In this document: positions 2,455-58,475 of the stretch, in pieces
Numbering within the stretch: the first letter of the stretch is position 1
Layout of the letters: each line of letters starts with the position of its first letter
NCBI RefSeq assembly: GCF_006345805.1
Contig: NC_042998.1
Coordinates: forward strand, 175,212,001-175,276,000
Direction: 5' to 3'
DNA from: Octopus sinensis
Taxonomy: Eukaryota
DNA length: 64,000 bases
Position numbers and translations under genes: made by a program
Notes under the pieces: model-generated
Database searches by the model: none
Told to the model about the DNA's origin: nothing
The model's input: the letters and a program-made list of their open reading frames with translations, nothing else

Positions 2455-2892
2455 CCTTGAAACTCCGACATCTGGCAGCTGACTTGGCAGACACCCATAA
2501 AATTATTAACCATCTTACAAACAATAACTCTGAGCACCTTTTCAAACTCCATTTGTCTAACACCCGTGGACAGGTTTACAAAGTCAGAAAACAGCACAGA
2601 TCCTATGACTTTCAGAAACATTTTTTCACGTTAAGAGTTGCTGAAGTATGGAACAAACTGCTGGCATCAGTTGTTAGTTGTCGGAGCACTGCATCCTTCA
2701 AAACTTCCATGCTTTGTGAGATTTGCCAACACTACACCTGATTTTCTCCCCTCCATACACACGCAAACATGTATCTGACTCATACACTGTTCGCTTTCCA
2801 GACATTTGTACATTACTGCATATACTTTATACGCACTTTTGACAAGTTGTGGTGCACTTGAGCACTGTATACAATAATTTCATTATTATTAT
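2455..2892 (+). mobile_element. CR1-clade LINE 3' fragment
   Basis: ORF2 C-terminus NTRGQVYKVRKQ...[13 protein letters not shown]...ASFK, then 3'UTR and (ATT)n tail. Confidence 0.85.
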
Positions 2893-5331: not shown

Positions 5332-5363
<32 letters not shown>

Positions 5364-5753
5364 TTAGCGTCCGCTTTCCATGCTAGCATGGGTTGGACGG
5401 TTCAACTGGGGTCTGTGAAGCCAGAAGGCTGCATCAGGCCCAGTCTGATCTGGCAGTGTTTCTACGGCCGGATGCCCTTCCTAACGCCAACCACTCCTTG
5501 AGTGTAGTGGGTGCTTTTTACGTGCCACCCGCACAGGTGCCAGACGGAGCTGGCAAACGGCCACAGACGGATGGTGCTTTTTACGTGCCACCAGCACGGG
5601 GGCCAGGCGAGGCTGGCAGCGGCCACGATCGGATGGTGCTTTTTACGTGCCACCGGCACGGGGGCCAGGCGAGGATGGCAATGGCCACGAACGGATGGTG
5701 CTTTTACGTGCCACCGGCACGGGGGCCAGATGGGGCTGGCAACGGCCACGAAT

Positions 5754-30606: not shown

Positions 30607-33600
30607 AACAGGCACCAATATATCTGTGGTTTTTGATTGACTAGAATTACCCAAAATTTGTGAAGTTTAAAAACTATCAACTTATTTATTAATTTATGGC
30701 AAATATGAATTTCGTTTCCATAATTAGCATACAAAGCTACATCAATACACCAGATTTGAATCAAATGGAACAAAAAGTCATTGGAAAGTGTTTTCCAAAC
30801 AGAAAAAAATATGGAAAAAACACTTTGCAGTATTTGTTCTGAGTCTTTACATTTCAAGTTCAAATCTTGCTATGGTAATTTTTTTATCCCTCTGAGGTTG
30901 GTATAAAGTACCAGGCAAGACAATCATATTGACTGACCCCACTACCCTCATAATTGTTGACTGTGTGCCTAAATTAGGAACCATTATTGCTGATGTCATC
31001 ATCGTTATTTAGTTGGTAGAATCAGTAGCATCCCAGGCAAAATGCTTAGTGGCATTTCATCCATCCAAGTTCAAATTCTTCTGAGGTCAAATTTGCGTTT
31101 CATTTTTTCCCGTGTTGATAAAATAAGTACCAGTCAAGTTTTAGGGTCAATGTAATTGACTAGCCCTTTCCCACAAAATTTCAGGTCTTATATGCCTATA
31201 GTAGAAAGAATTATTTTTACTTCTACTACTACTACTTTTTAAAATAAATTTTTTATTTGTATTTCAGAAAAATGGTGAGTTCAAGATTAAGTTTGAATAC
31301 AATTCAGAAAAGAGGTAAGTCTCCTATATATGAATACCTTACATTTTATTTTGCATTATTTTATTTATGTATTTGTCTCTTTGTACATAATTTTATGAAT
31401 TAAAATTCTTAGTAACATTTCATCATCACAATTGTTATTGTCATTTCTTAGAGAGCTGTAGTTCAAGCAACAATAAAATATAAATTAAGTGTAAATGTCT
31501 CCTGAGTCCCACAGATCTTTTAATGACCAGTTATTTCCCCAGTTTCATGATTTGAAGTAGTTGAGAGGCAAATCCCTTAATAGTCTATCATAAATAATAT
31601 TCCCAGATCCATCTATTAACAGCCTCAAACATCTATGTAAACTGAACTAATATAGAATAAAATGTTCTGCTCAGAAATACAACTAAACACTTGGAGTAGA
31701 TCTGACCTTATGATTGGCAGCCAACGGGATTTAACATCAGTACTACAAGCAAATGAAGGACTTGCTAATTTTGCAGTGGTACCACTACTTAAACCAGAAA
31801 ATCTCTCTACTATAAATATGTAATATATAATATGACTACCAACTAGTTACTTGGTTATCCATTATCTTAGCCATTCAACCATGTATGCATTTAATCATGT
31901 ATTTACTGTATTCTAGTGCATTTTATTGTAATTTAGTGTCTTTCTTACTCCTGTTGCTGCTCATAAAGAATTTATATTTATTGCTGTGTATCTTAGGGCA
32001 ATCCAAGTGAGTCGGTCGATACCATATGAAGACTTGGTCCATCATGTTATACAACGATATGGTATGAAGCTGCAAATGTTCTACACCCAGCCTAATGGAG
32101 AAGTAAGTATTTGTAATTTCTGATATTCACATAAATTTTAGGAGACTGGTATGGTCAGTTAGCTGTTTCTACCCTAATAATGTTACATAATTGTTTATTC
32201 ATATGGATGGTGTCCAAAAGTAATTTATTTGGATAGTATGGTGAAGTGAACACTTAGCTGAGAAGGTTTATTAACATCAAAACATGTCCAGAGTTGTCTC
32301 CCATATTTGTCAAGATAAAATGATCATCATTGTTTAACGTCCGCTTTCCATGCTGGCATGGGTTGGACGGTTTGACTGAGAACTAGTCAGTATGACATTT
32401 TACATTGTTTTTAGTTGTTTTTAGCTTTTTTTATTCATCATATAATTGTTTCACACTAGGTTATTGATCTTCTTTTCTTTAAGCATGTTAACATTAACTT
32501 AAGCTCATTTTTCCACACATAAAAACATACCTCACATTTCTAGGTGAGGACATAATCTATTGAATTAAACTCAGTATATTAGTAATAATTTAGCAACTCC
32601 AAGGGGGATGAAAATGAAGACAGCCATGACAAGATGGAAAATCAAACCGTAAAGGAACATAACTAAATACTGTCCAGCATTCTACTCTATTTACCATTCT
32701 CTCAAGGGCTTTATTAAGCTAGTGGAAACGAAACAGAATGCTAAATATACCCAACTGATGTGTTCAGTTTCTTTTTAGCATGCTATCAGTAAGTTTATCC
32801 TGAACAGATAAAAACAGAAGGGAAGTTGAGATTATGCTGGTTGATTACACTGGAATTATGTATGAAAGAGGCTGTGGGAATTTATTGTGTTAATGCTTTT
32901 ACCACCTGCCATTTTTACAGATGCGAAATAATTTACAGCCTAGAACACAATGGCAGCGTTTAATTGTTTTCATCAAAGCAAACTCTGCTGGAGCAACAGT
33001 CAGCATTATTTTTAGTTGAATGAGAGGATCCTCCACACAGGTGCTAAGCCTGCTAGAAATAATAGTCAAATCTCTTTCAAATTACGTCTTATCATCTTAA
33101 AACAAGAAGGGAACATTGGGTAATTTGGTGCTAAATAGAATATGGCCAACAGAAAGATGGAACATTCACAGTTGGAATACCTTTGATCATAGGTTTGCTT
33201 GATCAGAGCTGGCCTTGGGCTAAATAGCCACATGTGTGAAACTCCTTATTGAAAGATCCACACCAGGTCACTAGACTGTCTATCATACTCTCCACTTATC
33301 TTTCTCATTCCTCCTTTTTATCAGGTCATCCCATAAGTTCTGTCCGATTTTACCTTTTTTTAATGGAATTAAAAATCATTTTTATGCATTTGTGTACATT
33401 TAAACTAATTAAATATTATTTTACAGAAGAATAGAATTAAAATTTCTTTGATTAAAACCCTTTCTAACATGGAAGTATCCAAAGAACACAAAAATGGAAA
33501 CTGCAGCCAAAGCGACTCAAAACATACACTCAATTTATGGGAAAGAATGCTTGAATGAAAGAACTTGCAGAAGATGGTTTCCAAAATTCAGGAGTGGAGA

Positions 33601-36236: not shown

Positions 36237-39200
36237 TTCTGTGAATTACTTTTAATTAATGTTTTGATTTTCTCCTCTGTTGCAGCATCGAGATTCACCT
36301 AGTCCACCACCTGGTTCATTACCCCCACATGAAATACATCTTCGACATAGCAGTTCCTACAATTCCATTACTGGAGAGGGACAATTCATTCCAGAACCAA
36401 TGCATCAAGATGAAGTAAGTATCAGTCAATGATTCATCATCATCAACATCATTTAGCGTCCGCTTTCCATGCTAGCATGGGTTGGACGGTTCAACTGGGG
36501 TCTGGGAAGCTAGAAGGCTGCACCAGGCCCAGTCTGATCTGGCAATGTTTCTATGGCTGGATGCCCTTCCTAACACCAACCACTCTGTGAGTGTAGTAGG
36601 TGCTTTTTACGTGCCACCGGCACAGGTGTCAGACGGGGCTGGCAAACGGCCACAGTCGGATGGTGCTTTTTACGTGCCAGGAAAAATAGATAGATTGTGT
36701 AAACTTGAACAGTCTGACTATTCCAAAGAGCAGGCACCAAAATAACAGCAGAAAACATGGACAAATGAAACCATGCATATCTGAGCAGTGACCGTAGCAT
36801 GTTTGTTTATATTGCTCTCGTATTACTCTTTCCTCTGCCTTCACTTCTTTTTACTTTTCCTTCCCCGTTGTCAGCATCATTTGTATTAGTAGTAACAATA
36901 GTCATAGTAGCAAAACCATCAATTGATTTACTATTATAATTGTCATTGCCCCTGCACTGTCAACATTCAACATTACCATCATCATCATCATCTTATTTAT
37001 GTTTCTAATACTTTCTTCTTCATTGTCTCTTTTGCAGCCAATTAGCTGTATGGGTCTGAAACACACATATAGTCCTGATGGTTCAATTGCAGGAAGTACA
37101 TCTTCGTTAGACAGTAATTATATCAGTTGCCAGTAAGTATTCTTTTGTCTCATTATTTTTGGGCTGGAATTATAAGTGGACATTAAACTATGGACTTCAA
37201 TCACAGTGTCACTTCAAAAGAATTTTTTCTTTGAACATATGCCTTCTATTTCTGTCAATAGACAGTGCAACATTTTGTCAACAGTCAGTACATTCCCGAC
37301 TTTGCCAACAAATTGCATCTTCCTTATTTTTGTCAAGAAATTGTACTTAAGTTAACCTCTATCTGATTACCTCTAACTGATGATTGATCAATGGTTCATA
37401 TTCTGCTTGTGTCTGTGATTGAGACATTTGGCTATACCTATCTAGCTGTTGTAATGTCCCACTGTAAGCTGCAGGAGCTTCACAATAGAATTAACAAATG
37501 TCTTGCTGTAATCCAGAGTTCAGCTCCTGTAAATATAGCTTGGTGAAGGATGATCTCTGTCAAGCTAACATGTTCTTGATTAACTACATAAAGACAAACT
37601 ACAATCAATAAGTTATGGGATTCATCAATAAACTCATCAATATCAGTTCGATAACTAGAACATTCTTTTGCAGAACGGAATTTGTATATTTCTGTCATAC
37701 TATCTTATATTGATAACTACAATTTATCACCATTCTTATTCTATAAATTATTAAGGCTGACTAAGTATTAGCCTATATTTTCAATGTTCCCTTTTGATGA
37801 TGATTCTAAGCCTTACATCCTTAGAAGCAGCAACAGAGGTAAACACTTTCAATATTAATTTTCAAAATTACAAATGTATTTTTCAAATTTAATTAAAGAA
37901 CTAGTAATCTTATTAACCTAAGCCCCAGGGTACTTAAATTTCTGAATATTACTTTCAAATTTTCACAGACGATTGAAAATAGGTTAAAATGAAAAAATCA
38001 ATTATCAAAACTCCTTTACTTCAAGTTAAAATGGAAATACACCATGTCCTATAAACAGGACATGGAAACAATGTGATATAGTTTATTTAACCCTTTTGTT
38101 ACTGTATTTATTTTGAGATGCTCTGTGTTTCTTTCGATTAAGCAACGCATATATCATGTAAGTCATTTATATTTATACCATAGAAGCCGTCTGTATTGCA
38201 TCACATAAGTAATATATATTTGAACTTACTTCTTTTTAAACAGTGGGGAGTCCTATCCTTTTCGGAATTCAGCTCGGCGAGACTCAAGGCGAAGTATTCT
38301 TTCAGATGGTAATAAAGAAGATATGCTTCCTGGTAAGACAGCTGATTTTACTAAACTTACTGCATTCTTTCAATTTTCTTTACATTTTGGTTTCATCAAA
38401 GCTTTGCATTTCAACTGTAATCTATTCCTTATACTAAATTTTTTAATATTTTCAGGAAGCAAAATGCAGGCATTTGGTACTTTCCCACGTGGTTACGAAA
38501 CAGGTACACACATGGCTGATGTTGAACGTAAGTTTATTTTTCATTGATTCTACAGGTTGTTGTATGAGATGTTTTTAATGCTATTAACCGCCTCTCCTTT
38601 TTTTGTTTCTCAGGTATTGACTGGTCCAATATCTGTTTACAAAATGACATCCCATAATCCACTAGATCATGTAATTACTACTGAAGACTTTTGCCTTCAC
38701 TTTGTTTAACTAGAACCAGTCTAGAAGAGGTTATTTGTCTCAAAGCTCTTTAGAACATTTGAATTTGTGGGTGGGAAACCTACAATCATGAAAAATGAGA
38801 AATAAAGTATTGTGATATTTCATTTTTGCATTTGGTTTGCAAGATTCCTAATGTGAACTCATATGTTGGAACAGAATTTGTTGTATCTCAGAAAAATCAT
38901 TACACTAATAATGTAATGAAAGAACTTTAACTAATCTAGCTGACTGATAGATTGGTTGGCCAAACAATTAATCAAACAATCAATTAGTTGACTGGTTAAA
39001 TGTTAATGAGTTGGCTAATAATAATAAAGGAAGTGAAATAGAACCTGTGCATGTGTTTATTATTGGCATAATAACCCTCCCAAGATACAACAACAACAGT
39101 TGTTGTGCATATACCTTTTCCAAGGATATATTAGTATGGTAAGAAAATATAACTGGATCCAAACAGGGTTACATATCAATAACAAAGTCACTTTGATCCG

Positions 39201-42200
39201 TGACGGAGAGGTGTGGCCAGGGTAAGTATCCAGGAGGTAAAGAAAATCCAATGTAGAGGTAAGAGTTGATAGTGGTGTTGGTAGAATATAGGATGAAATG
39301 TATCTTTCTGTTGAAGAGCATAGGCTCAAAACGTAAAAGACTTGTTTTATTTATATTCCTGAGCGCCATACTAATACAATTGTTTGTTTGTATTCCACCT
39401 GCCTTCGTCTTTTGTTTATTTTCATAAAGCTTCCCATTACATATCAAGCTGACTGTGACCTTATTTCTCTTCTCCCTGCACCCACTAGATTCTTATTTAT
39501 AAAAACACTAAACTCAGAAGTATAACAACTGTTTCTAAAACATAAATTTGCAGTAGCTGAGTAGATAACCTGTCAAATACTGGTTTTGCAGTTTCTAAGT
39601 TTGAGTCTTGTTGTAAGCATTGTGCTTGACTCATGGACAAGACAATCAACGCAAATTGTAAGAAATTTACTACAGATTGCCCTGATTACACATGTCGTCA
39701 TGTTATCATTTTGACATCTAATTCCATGCTTGCATGGGTCAGTCAAGATTTCTACAGCTGGATGCTCTTCCTGTCACCCACCCACACTTGTTTCTTGTGA
39801 CCAGACGTTTTACAGAAGGTTAGAAATGAAGACACTACTTATCTAGTGGTGAGGATGGTTTGCAACTATCATGTGATGTCCAGACAAGAAGACACTGACA
39901 CTGACACATGTGTACACATGCACTCTCACATATGTGCATGTACACACACACACATATATATAACAGGCTTCTTTCAGTTTCCATCTGCCAAATCAACTAA
40001 CAAGGCTTTGGTCAACCTGAGGCTATAGTAGAAGACAAGGTGCTATGCTGTGGAACTGAGCCCAAAACCATGTGGCTGAGAAGCAAACTTCCCAGCCACA
40101 CAGCCACTCTTGTCTTCAATAGTACTTACATGATTTTTTTTTACTGACCAGGCTATCAGATGTTGCTATACATCGCTGGTCACAATGCGCTTCACATTGT
40201 TTTAGCCTTCAAATGATGCCACCCCGCTGGCTAAGCAAGTAGGCCAACAGAAGAAAGAGTGAGAGAAAGTTGTGGCGAAAGAGTACAGCAGGGTTCACCA
40301 CCACCCACTGCCGGAGCCTCATGGAGCTTTAGGTGTTTTCGCTCAATAAACACTCACAACACTTGGTGTGGGAATTGAAACCGCAATCCTATGACCGCAA
40401 GTCCGCTGCCCTAACCACTGGGCCATTGCGCCTCCACACTTGCATGATATATCTAAATATAATGTTCATATGTTTTAATATATGTATCTTTGGTTCTGTC
40501 CTACATTAGTCCTTAACAATTATAAATTTAATTTAATCATTAAATTAATTTAATTTAATGATTAAATTGAAATTTAATTTAAACATGCATATGAATATGT
40601 GTGAATTCTTATGTAATTTAGTAAGTCACAGAAGCATGGTTGCCACTTACAACTTGTAAAGATAATTCATTTTAATGAGAGAATAAGTTATACAGAAATT
40701 AACTCAGCTTGAGTCAGGTATAAATTACTTAAACATCTTTAAACAAAGCATTTTTCTTCTCTTTTTGATAAATTTAATTTGTTAATTTAATGAATTAATA
40801 AAATTATTCCTTTATTCAGGTCATCGAACATTTCCTCGCTCTAATAACCGCCGGCCAGAACTTTGCTCTAGGTCAGTCCCAGCATTGCTGACCCGTGGTA
40901 GTGAGGGTACACTCAGTAGCACACGCAGTACCAGTAGTAGTAGTAGTGGTTTACCACCTGATCCTGATTTGGACTCACCTGAAGGCAGATTATTGATGAA
41001 ACGGAACAGTGATATGGACAGTCCTAGTTTTGGCTTCTCTGATGTTCATTTTTCTAAATGTGAGCTCATCCTTTGATTATTATTCATCCTGTTCAGTTTT
41101 GGTTAAAATGCTTAATTATATAGATTCTCATTAAATCAGTTAAGTTAAAATTTAATAAAACATTACTACAAGTTTAATTCCAATAAAATTAAATTCACCT
41201 GAGCAAGAAAAAGAAATATACTGATACTGTGAAATGTTGATTGTAAAGGTTGAAGGCCCACAAGAGTAGTGGTTGAGTGAGGTAGGAAAACCACCAAATA
41301 TCAAAGACATTAGTTGAGCTACACAATAGGATTACTATTGTTTAGTCCAAAGTCAGTCCTAATCAAGCACACATTTATCAGAAACATTCCCAGATGACCA
41401 TCTTGTCTTTTGTGCGGACTACATTATCCAGTGTGTTCTTTTTATTTAAAATTTTTAAGGTATAATTTAGATGAGAATAAGTTGTTATTTCTAGTATGCT
41501 GAGCTACCACATGTGCACTGGCTTGAGAGAAGACGTTATATAGGCATGTAATGCAACCAAATACTAAATGGAAAATAAACTGACATTATAGATATGATTA
41601 TATGAGTTTGCAGTAGGCCAAAAAAGACTTGATGTAAAACCTTAGAAGGATGCAATTGCAGCGTGGAAGGTGTTTATAAGCTATTTAAGAAACAGACAAA
41701 AACCGTTAGATTCACTTCAACATTTAAATTTAATTTGTCAAAATATTTTCGTCGCTTTGAGATCGCGACCTGTTCGCTGACAAAACTTCGTGCTGCATGA
41801 AGTTTTGTCAGTGAACAGGTCGCGGTCTCAAAGCGACGAAAATATTTTGACAAATTAAATTTAAATGTTGAAGTGAGTCTAACGGTTTTTGTGTGTTTCT
41901 TAAATGGCTTATAAACACCTACCCATGCTAGCATGGAAAGCGGACGTTAAACGATGATGATGATGATATGCTGCAATTGTTTTCATTCCAGCACACGATC
42001 TCAGATCAAGTCACTCGCTATGCAAGTACAAGGAGGAATGGTAATATAAGATTGAGACATGTGAAAGGTGCTGAATGTTGGAAGTAAGAAAACCTAACAG
42101 GAATGGATGTTAAAGTTAGGATTATGATAATAGTTTGTTATTGTGCTGCGGAGTTCAGTTTTGTCATACATAGCGGAAATCTTATAGATAATTCTGAGTT

Positions 42201-44115
42201 CCTACCTTTCACCTAAAGAGTTCTCTCTGTATGTGTTTGTTAGTCTGTTACATTTTCTAATTGTGATTTTCAAATCTACTTGAAGCTCCCCGAGCACCAA
42301 CAAATTGGAAGAAAGGTCGGTTACTTGGTCCTGGTGCCTTTGGTGAAGTGTATTTGTGTTATGATGAAGACTCTGGCCGAGAACTAGCAGTCAAACAAGT
42401 TCAAATATCAGCAGACAATGCAGAAGTTTCTAAGGTAAATTTAGTCTTTATAGTCCTGAGATTCATTTTAATCAACTATATTTTCCCCTAATATTTGTGG
42501 ACATGTGCTAAAAAAAAAGAATGGTAGAGGAGGGAAAAGTACAGTGTTTTGAACAATTTAGTCTTGAGTATATTTAAAAACTATTCCAGGTATACCCAAT
42601 ATAATTTTCCCATTATGACACCATCCTATGACTTGTATTTCAGGATATCATTATTTTTGTATTATCGTCTTGGCTGCTAAATAGTTTCTTTTGTAACAAG
42701 GGAGTGTGTGTATCTCACATATGGATGTGAGAAAAATTATCCCTCTGATACAACATGGGTATAGGGACATTATTCATCTAATATCACATAAGAATAAAGA
42801 CATTGTCTTTCTGACAAGCTAGCTTTTCATGAGTTATGCAGGAATATTATTTCTGCATATATCCAATTTCTTAAACCAACATTAAAACTCCTGTTCTCTT
42901 CATTATGCTTTACAGGAAGTCCGGGCTTTGGAAAATGAAATCCAGCTTCTTCGAAACTTTCATCATGAACGAATTGTTCAGTATTTTGGTTGTATACAAG
43001 GGAAAGTACTATCAATATTCATGGAATACATGCCTGGGGTAAGAATAAGTTTGTTGTTTCATACAAATTTCCTTTTATTTTTTTTTTATACTGTCACTAC
43101 CATCATCATTTTCATCATCACCACCACCAACAACATCATTATTATCAGCACTACACTATCATCATAAGCATAGTAAGTTTTTCAATTTCTCAATGACTTG
43201 TATTTTTCCAGCTTGTGTAAACCCTGTTGATCTTTACACAGACCCACATGCATATTGTCTCTCTCTCTCTCACTCATAATGGCCTCTACTTCTGGAGCCA
43301 GTTAGTCTTATACCTCTACCACTCAGGGATTTCCATCCCACTTATCGCTCTACCTCTCAGTACTCTTGGTACATTTGGTTACCGTTTTCCCCTTCACTGA
43401 CCACTGTGCCCAATCCTTTTTCCCCAGAACATATCACCTTTGAAATCTCCTTCTGGCTCAAACTTTACTTGCAGCTGTTGCCATAACAGTTTAAACAGAA
43501 CATTAACAGTATTGAACTCACCAGTCTTAGTAGACCTGCAAAGGTCATGAACTCTGCCCTTTACACAAGTAAAAAATAAAAAATTAACTTGCATGACTCT
43601 ATTTCATGTACATTGATTTGATACAGTTGTCTCATTACTGTAAATTAAATGTAGCTACATAGCATATTAGCAGGTTACATGTTTATGTAGAATTCTTTGT
43701 TTGGACATGGTTAACTGACCTGTATCAAAATTTAAGCAGGCCTTTTAGGTTCAGTGTCTGTTTCTTATTCCTATGTTATTTCAATTAGTAAACCCTTTAA
43801 TTGTTTGGACTCAGGATTTTAGTTTTAATGTAGAATTTAAATATTCTTATTCAGAGGATTGTAATGACATATGGATGGGAGCATCAATTCTTGACATTCA
43901 GAATAAAAAAATTGTGTCCCTATAGTATTGTCTGTTCCTCACATGTATAGAAAAGTAGACATTCAAATGATGATGATGGCTATGATTTAGTAATTAAAAC
44001 CTGGAAGTTAATTTCTTTCAGTAAGACTTATTTCTGATTTCATTGTTATTGCATGTTCTCTTTCATTGATGCTTTTGTTCCTTTTTTTTTATGTGCCGCA
44101 TCACTGCAGTCATTG

Positions 44116-44149
<34 letters not shown>

Positions 44150-44940
44150 TTTTGTTTCTGTTTACTACCTTATGTTTTTTAATGCTTAGACTCAGATGTC
44201 AAGCTCAAGTGAAACATGTTTAATCAAAGTAGAGCAAGCAGACTTAAGTGTTTATACATGAAGCACAACACACTGACAATAGCAAGATCTGAGTTTATGA
44301 CCATGTGGTCAGCATTTCAATGTCTTGTAGCCATTGTCTCTCTCTGTCACAGACATTATTATCCTTTTCTATTTCTTTACTACCCACAAGGAGCTAAACA
44401 CAGAGAGGACAAACAAGAACAGACAAACGGGTTAAGTCGATTATATTGACCCCAGTGCATAACTGGTACTTATTTAATTGACCCCAAAAGGATGGAAGGC
44501 AAAGTCGACCTCAGCAGAATTTAAACTCAGAACGTAGTGGCAGACGAAATACTGCTAAGCATTTTGTCCGGCGCTCTAACATTTCTGCCAGCTCGACGCC
44601 TTTATTATCCTTTTCATCATCTTAATTACTACCTTCTTCATTATCATCAACAACAACATTTTCTAAATAATTGGCATTCTTTTAAAACTATTTGTGTCTG
44701 ATAATTTCATTTTTTTTCTTGTTCATTTCAGGGTTCTTTACGGCAGCAATTACAAAATTATGGTCCATTAAATGAAAACCTTGCTCGGAAGTACACCCGA
44801 CAAGTTCTAGAAGGATTAGCATTTCTGCACAAAAATGTTATTGTACATAGAGACATAAAATGTAAGTACTGACTTCATATTTTAGACCAACATTATTTTT
44901 ACCTACTTTTCTTTTAATCTTCTCTTAACCTTATTGTGCT

Positions 44941-44972
<32 letters not shown>

Positions 44973-47900
44973 TAGTTTTATTTTTATAGCGTGCTTTCAC
45001 TTCACTACCGAGCGCAGCTCTGTGTGCCTTGGGTATGTGCTGTGATTTGTTGTGATGCTCTGATGGTTATTGTATGGAAAGTGTTCTGCGTAGGATGTGT
45101 ACAGTGCCTAATTATTATTATTATTATTATTAAAAGTAGCTATGATGACCTTTGGGGATTTCCTTACAAGCTGTTGGCATTCATATCTTCTCCAAATAAA
45201 GTTCCGAATTTGCAATGGAACTTATATTGTTGATGTCTTAATACAACATTTTGCTGAGTGTGTCACAAAATTATGTAAGGTGTAACACAACACTTTCATA
45301 TTTGCTAAATCATATAGATATGCCACATTGCAATGTATAATTGCAAAATTGTCCTCAAAATATTTTATCCCACCTTCTTTGCTTATCTTTCCTTGTTTAT
45401 CCTATATACTCCAACCCTTTCTTATATAGTATAATATGGAGTAGCCACTGTATCCTTACTATCATACTTTAACTTCTTAACACCTTGTAAAACAACTACA
45501 TCTCTGCTATACTCCCTCTTAGTTGAAGGAGCTCTTTGTTCTAGTGAGTTATATGGGGATCTCAGTAGTGCTGATGCCATGAAAAAAGCATGCAGTACAC
45601 TCTGTAAAATGGCTATTATTAGGAAGGGTATCCACCTATTTAAAATTATGGCAAAACTGAGACACTGGAGCAAGACAAAGTCTTCTAATCTGTTGTATCC
45701 TATTCTTCTAATCTGTTGTATCCTATTGAACCATCCAAGCCATGCCAGCATGAAAGTGGTGTGGTGTGTGTACCAATGGTTGATCTCTTTTAACCTCACA
45801 TACTTATTTTTACATATGAGCCCAAATAATTTTTTTTTTAATGTATATGTAAATAGTGTGTTGTCTCATTTTTAGTGAAAAATAACTGTGTTACTTTCCT
45901 TTAAAAGTTGAAAAAATATTGTTTTAAAGATTATAAACCCACTCAAATTATTTTAAATCATGGTTGACTGGACTTATCTTTACTTTTATAATGATTTTTA
46001 TTTTACAGGTGCTAATATCTTAAAGAATGTTCAAGGTAATGTTAAGCTTGGAGATTTTGGAGCTTCCAAACGATTACAAAGTATTTGTAGCATGTCAGGA
46101 CTGAAAACAGTAATTGGAACTCCTCATTGGATGGCGCCGGAAGTTATTAATGGTGAGGGTTACTGTCGGAAAGCTGACATATGGTAAGCTTCTATATTGT
46201 TATTTTTTAAAACAAAACAATGTTAGTAAATTAGGAATATTTTTTTCAAAGGTTATAATAGCAGTGAAATGGTCAACTATGACAGTTATTAGCTATCAAA
46301 AGGATATTAATAGCACAAGGAAAATGATTCCATTAAGAGTCAAGATTAAATCACAAACAAATTTCTCTGACAAGCTAGGATGATTTCACAATAAACACTA
46401 TACCGATTATGCTGAGGAAGCCTCTGTGCAGCCACTCAACTTGCCAGAAGTGGCAGCCAAATTTTCCTTTACAGTCTTGGAAAGAAAGGACAATGCTAGT
46501 TGTGGTTATGCTGTGTCTGAATAAAAAGGCATTGAATGGTCATGACCTTAGAACTGCTCAACTAGGATTGATCTTGGGCTAAACACCAACACTATAATAT
46601 GTACAATAATAATTTTTCCTGAGAGCAAAAACTTTTAATAAAAGGAATTGATGTAGTTTGCCAAATTAATATCAATATATTACTTGAGGAATCTCTTAGA
46701 TGGTTGTTCAACTTGCTAGAATTAGCAGCCAGATCTCCATGAAAAGAACACATTTGATAATGTGATCCATAGTGCACTGTACCTAGGAAAAGGATTGGAT
46801 GGTCATGATTGGAATGCTATTGATAACAGGTCTCTTTGGTTAGAACTGACCTCAGGTGAAACAATGACTGGTGTTTATCAACTTTCAACCCCTTGGTTGA
46901 TAAAAAGTAAGCTCAGTCTTGATGGCATCAAATAAGGTCTTATTTGGTTATCTCCACCATAACAATAATAATAATAAAAACCTTCTAACTTTAGTTTAAA
47001 ACTAGGAATTTAAGGACAGACTGTAATTAATTAAATAGACCTTAATACTTAATGGACATTACTCAACTCATGCCTATTGACAAGAAAGTTGATTCAGGTG
47101 GAAACAAGGCATTTAGTCTATTACCTTTCTACTTCAGTTATTCTGCCATTTAATGATTATCATTATCTTTAATTCAGTAATCTTACTTTTATTGCATGCT
47201 ATCACTGCATATCCAAACACAGATTTGTAGGTTTTGGGTACATGTAGTGTTTTTTTGTTTTGTTGAGGTTTTTTCTATTGCATTGAAGGTACTCTATGTA
47301 ATATGCATGCAGTGCTTAATAAATGCAGTTTCCTGTATGTCAAGTACATGAGTGTAAATTTTGGCATTTGGGCTAAGAATACTGTAATAATGATGGCCAT
47401 AGATCCAATGAAATAGGGAAATGGTGGGAAGGAATTCAATTATATTAATAATCTGATGATGATGATGATTAAAACTTTTCAGCAGAACTTTTTTTAATTT
47501 TACCTCTATTTTCTATGCAAATTGTGTAGAATAGTTCTACAAATTTTGTGATATTTTCATATTAATTATCTGACTTACATATTTGATAGCAGGTTGACTC
47601 AGCTCCACACTATTTAAAGGGATCTTTTCCTTTTGAACAGCAGTTTGTAACATAATTTCTAGGTAACTAAAAAGTTTTAAACTTCGTATACTGGTAGAAT
47701 GTGTTCATAAAACATCATTTTCTCTTGGCTTTATTGAGAAAATTCTATAGGTTGTAACATATTTCGTCTTTAATTTCTTGCATTTCGGCAATTTTAACCA
47801 ATCACTGGCGTCTATTTAGGTAAACAACATTCTGTGCCGCATGAATATGTCCCTCCTTTAAGAAACAGATTGGGTTTATTTACATTTGTGAAGAAAAAAG

Positions 47901-49640
47901 ATACCCTTCCCCCACCCCTAACCCTAAATCTAAAATAGATTGAAATGCAATAGATCGGTACTAGGGTTATAATTATGGGTGACAATTTCATACGACACCA
48001 CTAAGTTTTTTATAGCAGTGTCGTATGAAATTGTCACCTATAATTATGACCCTAGAATCGATCTATTGCATTTCAATCTATTTTAGATTTAGGGTTAGGG
48101 GTGGAGGAAGGGTATCTTTTTTCTTCACAAATGTAAATAAACCCAATCTGTTTCTTAAACGAGTGATATATTAATTGGTTAAAATTGCCGAAATGCAAGA
48201 AATTTTAGACGAAATATGTTACAACCTATAGAATTTTCTCAATAAAGCCAAGAGAAAATGGTGTTTTATAAACACATTCTACCAGCATACAAAGTTTTAA
48301 AGTTTTGTGAACAGAAATGGACTATTCTCCCACTGACTACAAATTTTAAAAATTAGTAAAGGATAGAATTTTTACATGATTTTGACAAATTAAATTTAAA
48401 TGTTGAAGTGAATCTAACGGTTTTTGTCTGTTTCTTAAATGGCTTATAAACACCTACCCATGCTAGCATGGAAAGCGGACGTTAAACGATGATGATGATG
48501 ATATGCTGCAATTGTTTTCATTCCAGCACACGATCTCAGATCAAGTCACTCGCTATGCAAGTACAAGGAGGAATGGTAATATAAGATTGAGACATGTGAA
48601 AGGTGCTGAATGTTGGAAGTAAGAAAACCTAACAGGAATGGATGTTAAAGTTAGGATTATGATAATAGTTTGTTATTGTGCTGCGGAGTTCAGTTTTGTC
48701 ATACATAGCGGAAATCTTATAGATAATTCTGAGTTCCTACCTTTCACCTAAAGAGTTCTCTCTGTATGTGTTTGTTAGTCTGTTACATTTTCTAATTGTG
48801 ATTTTCAAATCTACTTGAAGCTCCCCGAGCACCAACAAATTGGAAGAAAGGTCATATCATCATCATCATCGGTACTAGGGTTATAATTATGGGTGACAAT
48901 TTCATACGACACCACTAAGTTTTTTATAGCAGTGTCGTATGAAATTGTCACCTATAATTATGACCCTAGAATCGATCTATTGCATTTCAATCTATTTTAG
49001 ATTTAGGGTTAGGGGTGGAGGAAGGGTATCTTTTTTCTTCACAAATGTAAATAAACCCAATCTGTTTCTTAAACGAGTGATATATTAATTGGTTAAAATT
49101 GCCGAAATGCAAGAAATTTTAGACGAAATATGTTACAACCTATAGAATTTTCTCAATAAAGCCAAGAGAAAATGGTGTTTTATAAACACATTCTACCAGC
49201 ATACAAAGTTTTAAAGTTTTGTGAACAGAAATGGACTATTCTCCCACTGACTACAAATTTTAAAAATTAGTAAAGGATAGAATTTTTACATGATTTTATT
49301 AAATATCTATTTTTTAGTAGTTTTATTTTTCCTTTTCTTTTTTGTTTGTCTTTTTACTTAAATATTTTTTTTTAAAATTCATATTTGTTTTTTCTTTTAT
49401 TTCAGGAGTCTTGGTTGTACTGTAGTAGAAATGTTCACAATGAAACCACCTTGGCCTGACCTTGAATCTATGGCTGCTATTTATAAAATTGCTACATCAG
49501 AACATCCAAAATATGAACTTCCTTTTCATGTCTCTGATATAGCTAGAGACTGTATTCGAAATTGTTTCAGAAAAAATTCTCGAGAACGTCCTACTGCTGA
49601 AGATTTGTTACGCCATAGATTTATATTCGAAGGTCTATAA
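26571..49640 (+). CDS. MAP3K2: MAP3K2/MAP3K3 (MEKK2/3)-like kinase, spliced CDS over 14 exons; PB1 + STE11-family kinase domain
   Basis: 14 exons joined by GT-AG introns with consistent phases; 1857 nt (618 aa + stop) from ATG 26588 to TAA 49638-49640. Motifs include [10 protein letters not shown] (PB1), [62 protein letters not shown] and WMAPE. Likely the single invertebrate co-ortholog of MAP3K2 and MAP3K3. Confidence 0.95.
27110..27500 (+). mobile_element. RTE-related SINE with ~3 minisatellite units
   Basis: ggcacgtaaaaagcaccatcc repeats, ttaggaagggcatccagc, (tga)n tail. Confidence 0.85.
28629..29028 (+). mobile_element. Non-autonomous Helitron, 400 bp
   Basis: A|TCtttatatataaaa 5' end; subterminal cccgagcaacgccgtgc hairpin; CTAG|T 3' end; inserted between A and T with no TSD. 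Confidence 0.85.
29640..30020 (-). mobile_element. Merlin (IS1595/ISXO2-like) DDE transposase remnant
   Basis: [25 protein letters not shown] and [11 protein letters not shown] motifs over two frames. Confidence 0.8.
30090..30604 (+). mobile_element. CR1-clade LINE 3' fragment
   Basis: [39 protein letters not shown]...TRGHAYK...[14 protein letters not shown]; (ATT)n tail. Confidence 0.9.
31268..31314 (+). CDS. MAP3K2: MAP3K2/3 exon B, PB1 start ([16 protein letters not shown])
   Basis: Acceptor atttcag, donor AG|gtaagt; 47 nt; matches MEKK2/3 VRVKFEHRGEKR. Confidence 0.93.
31997..32102 (+). CDS. MAP3K2: MAP3K2/3 exon C, PB1 ([35 protein letters not shown])
   Basis: Acceptor tcttag, donor GAA|gtaagt; 106 nt; phases fit both neighbours. 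Confidence 0.93.
33321..34497 (+). mobile_element. Mariner DNA transposon with both ends, decayed transposase (about 33469-34422)
   Basis: TA|tcaggtcatcccataagttctgtccga ... tcggacagaacttatggaatgacctga|TA; WVPHEL, VTGDKKW, HQDNA and [13 protein letters not shown] motifs; stops and frameshifts. Confidence 0.95.
35275..35480 (+). mobile_element. LINE ORF2 internal fragment (endonuclease-RT linker)
   Basis: [20 protein letters not shown] resembles the CR1 linker motif NPKxFWKYV. Confidence 0.55.
35879..36061 (+). CDS. MAP3K2: MAP3K2/3 exon D, PB1 end + linker ([31 protein letters not shown]...SESYYN)
   Basis: Acceptor cttttcag, donor AAT|gtaagt; 183 nt, open frame. Confidence 0.93.
36286..36414 (+). 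CDS. MAP3K2: MAP3K2/3 exon E ([16 protein letters not shown]...[14 protein letters not shown])
   Basis: Acceptor ctgttgcag, donor GAA|gtaagt; 129 nt; conserved SPPPG and EGxFIPE motifs. Confidence 0.94.
36435..36680 (-). mobile_element. Truncated RTE-related SINE just downstream of exon E
   Basis: Same body as the 5332 copy, about 1.5 minisatellite units. Confidence 0.85.
37038..37132 (+). CDS. MAP3K2: MAP3K2/3 exon F ([31 protein letters not shown])
   Basis: Acceptor tttgcag, donor CA|gtaagt; 95 nt; corresponds to vertebrate SGSCPSLDSP. Confidence 0.88.
38244..38332 (+). CDS. MAP3K2: MAP3K2/3 exon G ([29 protein letters not shown])
   Basis: Acceptor tttttaaacag, donor G|gtaaga; 89 nt; GESYP conserved. 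Confidence 0.88.
38456..38527 (+). CDS. MAP3K2: MAP3K2/3 exon H ([23 protein letters not shown])
   Basis: Acceptor attttcag, donor C|gtaagt; 72 nt; GTFPR corresponds to vertebrate GTYPR. Confidence 0.9.
39300..39445 (+). mobile_element. Short Penelope-like terminal-repeat fragment with hammerhead-like motif (G12A, probably dead)
   Basis: tcttt-CTGTTGA-A-GAGC(atag)GCTC-AAA-ACGT-A-aaaga at 39303-39340. Confidence 0.6.
39950..40112 (-). mobile_element. 5' half of family A SINE
   Basis: cacacagccactcttg head, ggcttctttcagtttcc core. Confidence 0.75.
40144..40437 (-). mobile_element. tRNA-head SINE family C
   Basis: Minus-strand head gtggaggcgcaatggcccagtggttagggcagcggac...ggtttcaattccc; sister copy at 52215. 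Confidence 0.85.
40820..41059 (+). CDS. MAP3K2: MAP3K2/3 exon I (RHRTFPRS...KRNSDMDSP...VHFSK)
   Basis: Acceptor tttattcag, donor T|gtgagc; 240 nt; RTFPR motif and KRNSDMD (vertebrate RRGSDID). Confidence 0.93.
41668..41920. mobile_element. 253-bp near-perfect palindromic MITE (126-bp arms, 1-nt loop at 41794)
   Basis: Arms differ at 6 positions; lies 366 nt upstream of exon J. Confidence 0.92.
42286..42434 (+). CDS. MAP3K2: MAP3K2/3 exon J, kinase subdomains I-II ([39 protein letters not shown])
   Basis: Acceptor ctacttgaag, donor AAG|gtaaat; 149 nt. Confidence 0.96.
42916..43038 (+). CDS. MAP3K2: MAP3K2/3 exon K, kinase III-V ([26 protein letters not shown]...FMEYMPG)
   Basis: Acceptor tttacag, donor GGG|gtaaga; 123 nt. 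Confidence 0.96.
44369..44602 (-). mobile_element. tRNA-head SINE family B
   Basis: Reverse complement of the 17138 copy. Confidence 0.85.
44732..44861 (+). CDS. MAP3K2: MAP3K2/3 exon L, kinase VIa-VIb ([13 protein letters not shown]...IVHRDIK)
   Basis: Acceptor catttcag, donor T|gtaagt; 130 nt. Confidence 0.96.
44943..45132 (-). mobile_element. R4/Dong-like 3' end in (TAA)n
   Basis: Minus strand encodes [14 protein letters not shown]; collinear with the 25351 copy. Confidence 0.78.
46009..46183 (+). CDS. MAP3K2: MAP3K2/3 exon M, kinase VIb-IX ([23 protein letters not shown]...GTPHWMAPE...KADIW)
   Basis: Acceptor ttttacag, donor TG|gtaagc; 175 nt; DFG and APE present. Confidence 0.97.
47669..48306. 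mobile_element. ~640-bp foldback (palindromic MITE) in the last intron
   Basis: Left arm 47669-47997 and right arm about 48018-48306, with a ~20-nt loop and a ~50-bp indel in one arm. Confidence 0.9.
47954..49297 (+). repeat. Direct duplication 47954-48383 = 48868-49297 flanking an inserted copy of 41844-42318
   Basis: 430-bp copies identical by eye (offset 914). Confidence 0.95.
48379..48853 (+). pseudogene. 475-bp duplicate of the 3' end of the intron preceding exon J, plus the first 33 nt of exon J
   Basis: Matches 41844-42318 with only 2 substitutions seen; intact acceptor ctacttgaag|ctcccc at 48820/48821. Confidence 0.93.
49406..49640 (+). CDS. MAP3K2: MAP3K2/3 last coding exon ([16 protein letters not shown]...[18 protein letters not shown])
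   Basis: Long polypyrimidine acceptor ending ttcag; 235 nt; TAA at 49638-49640. Confidence 0.96.
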
Positions 49641-50169
49641 TACTAGCTTTTTTTGACTTTCTGCACTTCTATCAAAAGTCTTTCACTGGTAACAAAAGCA
49701 GATATGGATAGGAAATGAAAGAGTAAAAAGATAATGAAGGAGAGAGAGAGAGTGAATCAAGTAAACAAAGAGAGATTATTGGTTTTGTTGTGTGAAATAT
49801 CTAAAGAATTTCTACATCTGTTTCAAATCTGGTCTGTTTTGCTCTTCTTCTTTAACCTGATTTTTCTGGACAAAGAAAACCAGGTATGATAGAAATATAA
49901 AAAGAAAAGTGTTGCAAATGATCTGTTTAGTTATCCTATATTTTTTCCAAAGAGAAAAAATGTAAGAGGTGGATCAAAGCCAGTGAACGTCTGCAATTAC
50001 TGGAAATCTTCAAGAGGATGTTGAAGCCAATGAATGTTCTCAGTGTCTGTGCTCCTTTTATTTACAACTGAGTCAAAGAAGTACAGCTGAAATGGTGCTA
50101 AATATTATTCAAGATTTGTCAAAAAGAGGCTTTGGTGTTTACTATCTTGGATTCAAGGTATGAAGAGAG

Positions 50170-51125
50170 AATAAAGTTGTTAGAAGTTGAAAATAAAAAT
50201 CAAGAAAATGGCATTCTAGTGTGAGAATGTTGACTGCAGCCATGGTTCTTGACAACAATTATGCAAGGGAGATAACAAAGATATTGGTTACAACAACAAT
50301 TCTTCAAACACCAAGTTCACTCTCTTTTTCTCTCTCTCTCTCCTCTCTTTCTTTCTCTCTACCTTCTATACATATTTCTTCCTACCTTATTATTAAGGCA
50401 GAGAAATGGTCTGATTAAAAATATAGAACAATTGAAATTATAAACAGCTGCCCTTAAAGTAGTACTGCTGTCCACTTAAAATATATTCTAAAGAATTTGA
50501 CTGAAATTGTTTCTACTGCTGCTGGCAGCATTATTATGATAAACACCACCTCAACTACAACCACAACAACAGTCTCAGTATAAAGAGCAATGAATAGATT
50601 GCAAGGATTATTACTCCTTATATGTACACTAAGCATGCAGGTACATGCACACATGGCTGTGTACGTATCATTCACTCACCAACAGTCTGCTAACATCCAA
50701 CACTTATTTTGGCCTGATTCTAGCAGTGACAATGAATATGAACTGGAAAAAAGAAAACTCAAAAGATCGAAGTAAATTGTCTGTAGCATTTGCATACCAG
50801 ATTCTTTTCACAGAACAATGGCTCTGGGGGTTGAAGTACTTAGACTATCTACACATGGTCGTGTGTTCAAACTTTGCTCTTTCTACAGCCATTGTGTTAC
50901 ATCCCACCTAAGAAATACACATTACTTTGTTTGCCCCCATTCTGCTTAGCTAGCCATGAATACCACTTCTGCTTGATGGTTAGCAGCGGGAAAGGGCATC
51001 CATTTGTAAGAACAATTGATCCAACAAAATGCAAATGTTCAAAAATGCAAAAAAAAATAGATATAACCCATACATCCATGCTAGCATGGAAGAAATGGAT
51101 GTAAAGCAGTAATAAATAAATAAAA
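50170..51125 (+). terminator. Candidate poly(A) signals for the MAP3K 3'UTR
   Basis: AATAAA at 50170, 50192 and a cluster near 51113-51125; the hexamer is common in AT-rich DNA. Confidence 0.25.
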
Positions 51126-58344: not shown

Positions 58345-58475
58345 ATAATAATAATAATAATGAAATTATTTTATACAGTGCTCAGGTGCACCACAACTTG
58401 TCAAAAGTGTGTATAAAGCATATGCAGTAATGTACAAATGTTTGGAAAGTGAACAGTGTATGAGTCAGATACATG
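58345..58475 (-). mobile_element. CR1 3'UTR fragment
   Basis: (aat)n-gaaattat...acagtgctcaggtgcaccacaacttgtc, same as 10925. Confidence 0.8.

What the first reader, a model, noticed from the sequence alone, without database searches (positions are those of the whole stretch)
47954..49297. Multi-junction templated duplication in the last intron (A-B-inverted filler-A')
Seen in the sequence: segment A (47954-48383) runs through a 5-bp microhomology (ATTTT, 48379-48383) into B, a copy of 41844-42318 from 6.5 kb upstream. B stops 33 nt into exon J. A 17-nt filler ATATCATCATCATCATC (48854-48870) follows; it is the exact reverse complement of 48488-48504 inside B. The filler rejoins the start of A through a 3-bp ATC microhomology, giving an identical 430-bp A'. 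The entry point into B and the return point at the start of A both lie in hairpin-forming MITEs. Established: serial microhomology switches with short inverted templated inserts are the signature of MMBIR/FoSTeS or Pol theta-mediated end joining. Inference: a very recent replication-based rearrangement seeded by foldback elements, or a chimeric-read assembly artefact at palindromes.
Basis: partly seen in the sequence, partly recalled or inferred. Interest (0 to 1): 0.75.

Follow-up and report, generated by a model that had tools for sequence, protein, structure and literature searches.

The report
Recent templated duplication in kinase-gene intron
A 914-base insertion in the last intron of a MAP3K2/3-like kinase gene looks like a recent DNA-copying accident in which the polymerase jumped templates about four times at short matching sequences; this is a clean example of a well-known process, and no sequencing reads were available to confirm it.

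Summary
A (47954-48383) and A' (48868-49297) are 430/430 identical. B (48379-48853) copies 41844-42318 with two differences. The filler is an inverted copy of a (GAT)5 tract inside B.

I add four refinements:
- With its flanking bases the filler match is 19 nt, and that 19-mer occurs nowhere else in the window.
- Both B-versus-source differences equal the reverse complement of the left arm of the source foldback. B is therefore a mosaic, which implies a fourth template switch between the hairpin arms.
- The two foldbacks are very stable hairpins. They have no target-site duplications and no other copies in the window, so the label "MITE" is unproven.
- The (GAT)5 tract is the tail of a 5'-truncated SINE-like repeat.

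Best reading (0.68): one recent, DNA-templated, microhomology-primed serial template-switching event of the MMBIR/FoSTeS class. It adds 914 bp and a decoy splice acceptor to the last intron of a MAP3K2/3-like gene.

An assembly or library artefact looks unlikely from the architecture (about 0.1) but cannot be excluded, because no reads or same-species sequence could be reached. The only outgroup is a set of congener contigs, which carry a SINE-like tail at the same site as one breakpoint.

This is a known kind of event, of modest interest.

The parts
41665..41923 (.). Source foldback S: arms 41665-41793 and 41795-41923 (129 nt each, 95% complementary, 1-nt spacer, apex at 41794)
   Evidence: Folded as single-stranded DNA it gives -144.4 kcal/mol, z = -32.7 against shuffles. 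No target-site duplication and no other copy in the window.
41683..41744 (-). Left-arm segment whose reverse complement matches the first 50-62 nt of B. This is the inferred first template after the A->B switch.
   Evidence: B carries the left-arm state at both diagnostic sites (41711/41877 and 41695/41893).
41844..42318 (+). Source segment S copied into B. It comprises 80 nt of the right hairpin arm, a SINE-like 3' fragment, unique intron sequence with the 3' splice site, and 33 nt of exon.
   Evidence: 99.58% identity over 475 nt.
41918..41969 (+). 5'-truncated SINE-like 3' end with a (GAT)5 tail. The tail is the template of the filler.
   Evidence: Alignment with five other copies in the window. 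The 19-mer match is at 41952-41970.
42286..42435 (+). Its first 33 nt are duplicated in B.
   Evidence: Acceptor AG at 42284-42285.
46184..49405 (+). Last intron of the MAP3K2/3-like gene (phase 2; 3222 nt now, 2308 nt without the 914-bp gain)
   Evidence: donor GT at 46184-46185; acceptor AG at 49404-49405.
47670..48306 (.). L/A foldback: outer arms 47670-47802 / 48174-48306 (94% complementary) and inner arms 47841-48003 / 48013-48175 (93%), apex near 48008
   Evidence: Folded as single-stranded DNA it gives -282 kcal/mol, z = -53. No target-site duplication.
47954..48383 (+). Segment A. It starts 54 nt before the apex in the left inner arm and ends 77 nt past the foldback.
   Evidence: 430/430 identical to A'.
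48379..48383 (+). Junction 1 (A->B): ATTTT microhomology, 5 nt
   Evidence: P of at least 5 nt by chance = 0.0076.
48379..48853 (+). Segment B, a mosaic. 48379-48428 carries left-arm-complement states and 48441-48853 carries right-arm/source states.
48429..48440 (+). Junction 2: a 12-nt zone (TGTTTCTTAAAT, equal to source 41894-41905) within which the copy switches from the left-arm complement to the right arm
   Evidence: The four left-versus-right diagnostic sites 41877, 41893, 41906 and 41921 read L, L, R, R in B.
48487..48505 (-). In-cis candidate template of the filler inside B (snap-back), 348 nt upstream of the 3' end of B
48821..48853 (+). Duplicated 33-nt exon fragment, preceded by a full copy of the genuine 3' splice site (AG at 48819-48820). 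It is a potential decoy acceptor.
   Evidence: If spliced from the 46183 donor, the frame reads [19 protein letters not shown]-stop, with the stop at 48876-48878. Whether it is used is an inference only.
48853..48871 (+). Junctions 3 and 4. The filler has 14 unattributable nt (48854-48867), and the 19-nt inverted match includes microhomologies of 1 nt (C) and 4 nt (ATCG).
48868..49297 (+). Segment A', the second copy of A. It retains only a 50-nt-stem hairpin (48868-48917 / 48927-48976).
   Evidence: inverted-repeat pair I7.
49298..49640 (+). Unique intron tail X (49298-49405) and the last coding exon (49406-49640, stop included)
   Evidence: The congener contigs align from 49290 onward.

Best explanation
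**Claim.** A single, recent, DNA-templated rearrangement made by serial microhomology-primed template switching (the MMBIR/FoSTeS class, that is, break-induced or stalled-fork replicative repair).

**Ancestral order (inferred):** left foldback arm - A - X.

**Steps (all inferred from the sequence):**
1. A 3' end that had copied A up to ...CATGATTTT left its template.
2. It annealed through ATTTT, 6.5 kb upstream, inside a 259-bp foldback. There it first copied about 50-62 nt using the left arm in inverted orientation.
3. It switched within a 12-nt identical stretch to the right arm. It then ran 413-425 nt through a SINE-like tail, unique intron sequence and 33 nt of an exon.
4. It folded back with 1 nt of pairing and copied 14-19 nt of the (GAT)5 tract in inverted orientation.
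5. It re-annealed through ATCG inside the second foldback at the start of A, re-copied A and continued into X.

The mirror-image order, with synthesis running leftward from a break at 47953|47954, gives the same product and cannot be told apart.

**Outcome.** A net gain of 914 bp: a 430-bp direct duplication that brackets a 475-bp dispersed duplication plus a short inverted insert. The gain places an intact copy of a 3' splice site in the last intron.
For: **Shown in the sequence**
- The boundaries of the A/A' duplication coincide exactly with the ends of the B+filler insert. This argues for one event.
- The source is retained and B is truncated at both ends, so B is the copy.
- Junction microhomologies are 5, 12 (within homeologous arms), 1 and 4 nt. 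Random junctions in this window reach at least 5 nt with P=0.0076 and at least 4 nt with P=0.022.
- The filler plus its flanking bases is a 19-nt inverted match unique to S/B.
- Both differences between B and S convert B to the complement of the other hairpin arm, in a contiguous L, L, R, R pattern.
- Chance alternatives for that pattern are 6e-6 (two mutations in B), 0.002 (two later mutations in S) and 0.011 (allelic differences).
- Both re-entry points lie in foldbacks that cover about 11% of the region (P about 0.012). These foldbacks are extremely stable as single strands.
- There are no substitutions in the remaining 903 compared bases. By my hand calculation the 95% upper bound on divergence is about 0.33%. 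The foldback arms differ by 5-7% and the congener by about 10%.

**From the literature**
- MMBIR produces templated insertions through template switching at microhomology (PMC8421209).
- Short (about 5-34 bp) inverted templated insertions form by a microhomology foldback mechanism, and paired inverted inserts from one locus are common (PMC11724301).
- Template switching between the arms of imperfect inverted repeats copies one arm's state onto the other (PMC7202029, PMC8604942).
Against: - No independent reads, amplicons or same-species sequence support any junction. Every attempt returned nothing.
- The direction of synthesis, the initiating lesion and the enzymes involved are all inferred.
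- One junction has only 1 nt of microhomology, which is not different from chance (P=0.47).
- The arm mosaic could instead reflect a source allele that is not in this assembly.
- Gene conversion between A and A' could make the event look younger than it is.
Confidence: 0.68

Rival explanations
1. Assembly or library artefact. An in-vitro chimeric molecule (polymerase template switching during amplification) or a gap-filling or polishing error was built into the consensus, and the genome has only L-A-X.
For: No independent sequence supports the junctions. Palindromes are known trouble spots for amplification and sequencing (general knowledge). A/A' identity is 100%, as would be expected for a copy made in vitro.
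Against: The product needs three or four ordered switches in one molecule and an exact return to collinearity. No shared k-mers could mis-join these loci in a graph, since the overlaps are only 5, 1 and 4 nt. No N bases or gaps are nearby. The whole 914-bp structure fits easily inside one long read. It is the only such structure in 64 kb. A consensus assembly would need most of its reads to carry the chimera.
Confidence: 0.1
2. Double-strand-break repair by Pol theta-mediated end joining or synthesis-dependent microhomology end joining alone, at a break at the A|X site or in the foldback, with no break-induced or fork-restart type of replication.
For: Junction microhomologies are 1-5 nt, and a 14-19-nt inverted snap-back insert was templated 348 nt away. 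Both are typical of templated end-joining products (PMC11724301 and general knowledge).
Against: The synthesis tracts are 475 and at least 430 nt, one template lies 6.5 kb away, and A is re-copied. All of this exceeds the short, local inserts typical of Pol theta (general knowledge). The yeast foldback inserts in PMC11724301 depended on Pol delta. This rival overlaps the best explanation and differs mainly in the enzymes involved.
Confidence: 0.1
3. Two or more independent events: an insertion of B+filler at a break, plus a separate tandem duplication of A.
For: None specific. Each step taken alone is a common mutation type.
Against: The duplication boundaries coincide to the base with the ends of the insert. 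All parts are equally young, with 0 substitutions in 903 nt.
Confidence: 0.04
4. Origin through a mobile element or reverse transcriptase: capture of a gene fragment by a Helitron or Pack-MITE type element, or insertion of a fragment of the gene's own pre-mRNA by a LINE at a nick, with a 430-bp target duplication.
For: A and B are both sense-strand pieces of one transcription unit. In a congener, a SINE-like tail sits at the same site as the A|X breakpoint. The filler has the sequence of a SINE tail.
Against: The 914-bp block has no terminal inverted repeats, no TC...CTRR termini and no short target-site duplication. The (GAT)n tract would lie at the 5' end or on the wrong strand for a 3' tail. 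Both the filler and the left-arm patch need an antisense-strand template that sense pre-mRNA cannot provide.
Confidence: 0.04

Closest known systems
MMBIR / FoSTeS complex rearrangements (microhomology-mediated break-induced replication; fork stalling and template switching), as described in human genomic disorders, cancer genomes and yeast
   Same: Several junctions in cis. Microhomologies of 1-5 nt. Templated inserts in both orientations taken from within a few kb. Copy-number gain with the source retained. Breakpoints at inverted repeats (PMC8421209, PMC4352052, PMC11293582).
   Different: The scale is very small (914 bp in total, against the kb-Mb events usually reported). It is seen in one assembly of an unidentified mollusc-like invertebrate. 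No enzymology or read-level validation is available.
Short inverted templated insertions formed by microhomology foldback at DNA breaks (Yu et al. 2024, PMC11724301)
   Same: The filler is a 14-19-nt inverted copy of nearby sequence, primed by 1-4 nt of microhomology. It lies within the reported size range of 5-34 bp.
   Different: Here the foldback insert is one step within a longer chain of switches, not the whole repair product.
Quasipalindrome-associated template-switch mutation (PMC7202029; PMC8604942; bioRxiv 10.1101/2023.08.09.552703)
   Same: A cluster of changes converts one arm of an imperfect inverted repeat to the exact complement of the other arm (2 of 2 differences).
   Different: The corrected arm appears in a dispersed copy (B), while the source arm remains uncorrected. 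The switch therefore seems to have happened during the duplication, not in situ.
Pol theta-mediated end joining with templated insertions
   Same: Snap-back templated filler and short microhomologies.
   Different: Tracts of 430-475 nt, one from a template 6.5 kb away, are atypically long.

Membership tests
MMBIR/FoSTeS-type complex rearrangement | Two or more breakpoint junctions in cis within one rearrangement | tested here: met
   Three sharp junctions plus one intra-foldback switch zone.
MMBIR/FoSTeS-type complex rearrangement | Microhomology at the junctions beyond chance | tested here: met
   5 nt (P=0.0076) and 4 nt (P=0.022) at two junctions. The 1 nt at the third junction is not significant.
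MMBIR/FoSTeS-type complex rearrangement | Inserted segments are templated copies of nearby sequence, in direct or inverted orientation, with the source retained | tested here: met
   B copies a source 6535 bp upstream. The filler is an inverted copy from 348 nt (in cis) or 6.9 kb away. A is re-copied. All sources are still present.
MMBIR/FoSTeS-type complex rearrangement | Exists in the genome (independent reads or amplicons) and arose in one generation | not testable with these tools
   No reads or same-species sequence were reachable.
MMBIR/FoSTeS-type complex rearrangement | Dependence on break-induced replication factors (Pol delta/Pol32, Pif1, Rev1 and others) | not testable with these tools
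   This requires genetics.
Pol theta-mediated end joining with templated insertion | Short inserts (tens of nt) templated close to the break | tested here: not met
   The filler qualifies at 14-19 nt, but the 475-nt and 430-nt tracts and the 6.5-kb template distance do not.
Quasipalindrome template-switch mutation | Clustered changes that make one arm the exact complement of the other arm of an imperfect inverted repeat | tested here: met
   Sites 41877 and 41893 in B take the left-arm complement state. Sites 41906 and 41921 keep the right-arm state.
   The flanks of 41665-41923 and 47670-48306 show no direct repeat.
   No other copy in the 64-kb window and no protein-database hits to an ORF crossing the inner hairpin of the L/A foldback. 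The two foldbacks do share the 13-mer TCTGTTTCTTAAA near their outer ends. The whole genome was not available.
SINE (for the repeat that ends in (GAT)n) | Multi-copy, 5'-truncated copies, simple-repeat 3' tail | tested here: met
   Six copies in the window. Three extend about 300 nt and three are truncated to about 45-55 nt, including the copy in S.
SINE (for the repeat that ends in (GAT)n) | Head derived from a Pol III gene (tRNA, 5S or 7SL) | tested here: not met
   No Rfam family reached its gathering threshold and ARAGORN found no tRNA in the window. I therefore call it SINE-like.

The most novel reading that the evidence does not exclude
The break that started the rearrangement may have been a retrotransposon endonuclease nick at a recurrent integration site. 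In a congener a SINE-like (GAT)n tail abuts the same intron tail X, within an interval (window-equivalent 49289-49294) that overlaps the A|X breakpoint interval (49293-49297). On this reading an aborted target-primed reverse transcription event was resolved by multi-step DNA template switching. That would link SINE/LINE activity directly to an MMBIR-type duplication.
Probability: 0.08. Interest if true: 0.5.

Novelty: new member of a known kind. Interest (0 to 1): 0.3.

Why it matters
If real, this is a compact, fully resolved natural example of germline serial template switching in a non-model invertebrate. Every template is identifiable within 7 kb. It includes a switch between hairpin arms that is seldom visible in larger events.

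It shows that long foldbacks act as landing sites for wandering 3' ends. It also shows how such events can place functional signals in new positions: here a genuine 3' splice site plus 33 nt of exon now sit in the last intron of a MAP3K2/3-like kinase gene. If that site were used, the kinase would be truncated (an inference).

It does not change current understanding of the mechanism. Its practical value is as a test case for assembly validation and for surveys of small complex structural variants.

Tried and rejected
**Independent support for the junctions: none found**
- Exact look-ups of ORFs spanning the filler junctions and the A->B junction, and of an ORF inside A, were not on record.
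- A 596-aa composite of junction-spanning and unique intron ORFs, searched against 5.8 billion proteins, gave no hit at E <= 1.
- An exact scan of JGI metagenome contigs for the unique tail of A found 0 matches.
- Look-ups of ORFs from the preceding exon, meant to fetch the congener's intron, found nothing.

**Origin of the window**
- A paper search for SRR11869384 and one for a SINE core string each returned 0 papers.
- The kinase search gave a best identity of only 72% (Mytilus and other molluscs). The species and its close relatives are therefore absent from the protein collection.
- Rfam and ARAGORN found nothing in the window.

**Explanations considered and rejected**
- Helitron or Pack-MITE capture: no termini, terminal inverted repeats or target-site duplication.
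- LINE-mediated insertion of a pre-mRNA fragment: the filler and the left-arm patch need antisense templates, and the (GAT)n tract is at the wrong end or on the wrong strand.
- A graph mis-join through shared repeats: the overlaps are only 1-5 nt.
- Haplotype false duplication: B comes from 6.5 kb away.
- Unequal crossing-over: there is no homology at the end of A.

**Not done**
- I ran no further search on finding the taxon, because the taxon would not change the verdict.
Full report
**Observation**

I read 47700-49600 and 41600-42600 and compared the segments by script.
- A (47954-48383) recurs exactly once, at 48868-49297. It is 430/430 identical, and identity stops at both ends.
- At an offset of 6535, 48379-48853 equals 41844-42318 except at source positions 41877 and 41893.
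- A and B overlap by ATTTT.
- The 17-nt filler (48854-48870) is the exact reverse complement of 48488-48504 and of 41953-41969.

A self-BLAST of the window shows that these are the only two direct repeats of at least 80 bp and at least 95% identity in 64 kb.

**Gene context**

They lie at about 42286-42435, 42913-43047, 44732-44860, 46009-46183 and 49406-49640, the last ending at a stop codon.

The concatenated kinase domain matches MAP3K2/3-like proteins. Molluscs score best, at only 72% identity. The gene call is therefore secure, but the species and its close relatives are missing from the protein collection.

The rearrangement lies in the last intron (46184-49405).

**The filler**

The bare 17-mer is not specific. 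It occurs six times in the window, because (GAT)n followed by AT is the 3' tail of a SINE-like repeat.

With the flanking C and G the match becomes 19 nt (CATATCATCATCATCATCG). With up to one mismatch this 19-mer occurs only at 41952-41970(-), 48487-48505(-) and 48853-48871(+), against 0 expected in shuffles. The other repeat tails have different repeat numbers and flanking bases.

So the filler is best read as templated from S or B in inverted orientation. It has 1 nt (C) of microhomology on entry and 4 nt (ATCG) on exit. Only 14 nt (48854-48867) cannot be assigned to B or A'.

**New: B is a mosaic**

The source lies in a 259-bp foldback with arms 41665-41793 and 41795-41923 (95% complementary, 1-nt spacer). 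Over the 80 nt of right arm that B includes, the two arms differ at four sites: 41877, 41893, 41906 and 41921.

B carries the left-arm complement at the first two sites and the right-arm state at the last two. Both "mismatches" between B and its source are therefore exact matches to the reverse complement of the other arm, and they are contiguous.

Chance alternatives are weak:
- two mutations in B landing on those sites with those bases: 6e-6
- two later substitutions in S, both falling in that arm, given none elsewhere in the four copies: 0.002
- two allelic differences, both within the first 50 nt: 0.011

The simplest reading is one more template switch within the 12-nt identical stretch 41894-41905 (B 48429-48440). 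The invading end first copied the left arm in inverted orientation. It then flipped onto the right arm, as in quasipalindrome template switching (PMC7202029, PMC8604942, bioRxiv 10.1101/2023.08.09.552703). A source allele absent from this assembly remains possible.

**The foldbacks**

The start of A lies in the left inner arm of a 637-bp foldback at 47670-48306. Its outer arms are 94% complementary and its inner arms 93%. The start of A is 54 nt from the apex. B starts 50 nt from the apex of the S foldback.

As single-stranded DNA the foldbacks fold at -144 kcal/mol (z = -33) and -282 kcal/mol (z = -53). Together they cover about 11% of the ancestral 41-50 kb region, so two re-entry points both landing in them has P of about 0.012.

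Neither foldback has a target-site duplication or another copy in the window. Calling them MITEs is therefore unproven. They do share the 13-mer TCTGTTTCTTAAA near their outer ends (0 expected by chance). This hints at relatedness, and the 13-mer overlaps the arm-switch zone.

**Mechanism**

Several features argue for a single event made by serial, microhomology-primed copying of DNA templates:
- the A/A' duplication brackets the insert exactly
- all sources are retained
- B is truncated at both ends
- all parts are equally young

Random junctions in this window show microhomology of at least 5 nt with P=0.0076 and of at least 4 nt with P=0.022.

The architecture matches MMBIR/FoSTeS-type events (PMC8421209, PMC4352052). 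The filler matches short foldback-templated inverted insertions (PMC11724301). Tracts of 430-475 nt and a template 6.5 kb away argue against Pol theta end joining acting alone (general knowledge).

Rightward synthesis (break at A|X) and leftward synthesis (break at 47953|47954) give the same product, so I cannot tell them apart.

Reverse transcription of the gene's own pre-mRNA is unlikely. The filler and the left-arm patch need antisense-strand templates. The inserted block also has no Helitron or Pack-MITE termini.

**Age**

Apart from the two patterned sites there are no substitutions in 903 compared bases. By my hand calculation (-ln 0.05 / 903) the 95% upper bound on divergence is about 0.33%. 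This is far below the 5-7% between the foldback arms and the roughly 10% to the congener. Gene conversion between A and A' could bias this estimate downward.

**Outgroup**

An exact look-up of the 69-aa ORF of the last exon found three Logan contigs, from runs SRR11869394, SRR11869384 and SRR11869391. They align to 49290-50750 at 89.5% identity, so they come from a related species.

Their first 22-27 nt are not A-like. They are a SINE-like tail...GGACGCTAAAC(GAT)4, that abuts X. The boundary between tail and target falls at window-equivalent 49289-49294. That interval overlaps the breakpoint interval 49293-49297.

By a rough hand estimate, this coincidence has a probability of about 1%. It could mark a recurrently nicked or fragile site. 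It gives no information about the duplication itself.

**Real or artefact**

I could not reach any reads or same-species sequence. The architecture argues against an artefact for these reasons:
- overlaps of 1-5 nt cannot mis-join loci in an assembly graph
- there are no gaps nearby
- the whole structure fits inside one long read
- an in-vitro chimera would need three or four ordered switches, a return to collinearity and majority read support

I put the artefact explanation at about 0.1.

**Consequence (inference)**

B carries 442 nt of the genuine upstream intron, including its 3' splice site, plus 33 nt of exon. If it were spliced from the 46183 donor, the frame would read [19 protein letters not shown]-stop, with the stop at 48876-48878. 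That would remove the C-terminal part of the kinase domain. No expression data were available.

**Verdict**

- The event is a new instance of a known kind.
- Interest is modest (0.3).

Noticed in passing
window 5343-5700(-), 27150-27500(+), 28131-28181(-), 32323-32366(-), 36436-36800(-), 41918-41969(+): A SINE-like repeat family ends in ...CCCATGCTAGCATGGAAAGCGGACGCTAAA(C/T)(GAT)n-AT. The longer copies carry internal repeats of GGCACGTAAAAAGCACCATCCG. Three copies are 5'-truncated to about 45-55 nt. Neither a tRNA nor an Rfam match was found.
   Followed up: partly
L001:1-50 versus window 49268-49320: Congener contigs from Logan (89.5% identity to 49290-50750) carry a SINE-like (GAT)4 tail abutting the intron tail X. 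The boundary interval overlaps the A|X breakpoint interval. This could be a shared nick-prone site or a coincidence.
   Followed up: partly
window 41684-41696(-), 47857-47869(-), 48147-48159(+), 48427-48439(+), 49061-49073(+): The two otherwise dissimilar foldbacks share the 13-mer TCTGTTTCTTAAA about 16-20 nt from their outer (or inner-arm outer) ends, against 0 expected by chance. In S/B the 13-mer overlaps the zone where the copy switches hairpin arms.
   Followed up: partly
window 41844 (apex 41794) and 47954 (apex ~48008): The two re-entry points lie at nearly the same distance from a hairpin apex: 50 nt after one apex and 54 nt before the other. With only two cases, the significance is unknown.
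   Followed up: no
window 47916-47927 and 48089-48100: Telomere-like (CCCTAA)2 / (TTAGGG)2 motifs lie inside the arms of the L/A foldback.
   Followed up: no
window 48819-48878: The duplicated 3' splice site plus 33 nt of exon could act as a decoy acceptor in the last intron. The predicted read-through is [19 protein letters not shown]-stop. After the event the locus has one left foldback arm and two right arms (inverted-repeat pairs I2 and I4), which could make it unstable.
   Followed up: partly
window 2768-2892 and 58351-58475: A 125-nt inverted pair at 95% identity lies 55 kb apart. It is the only other long near-identical repeat in the window.
   Followed up: no
window 42286-49640: The best database match for the MAP3K2/3-like kinase domain is only 72% identical (Mytilus, Candidula, Elysia, Lottia). 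The source species and its close relatives are therefore absent from the 5.8-billion-protein collection, and no spliced transcript of this gene from the congener runs was found.
   Followed up: no
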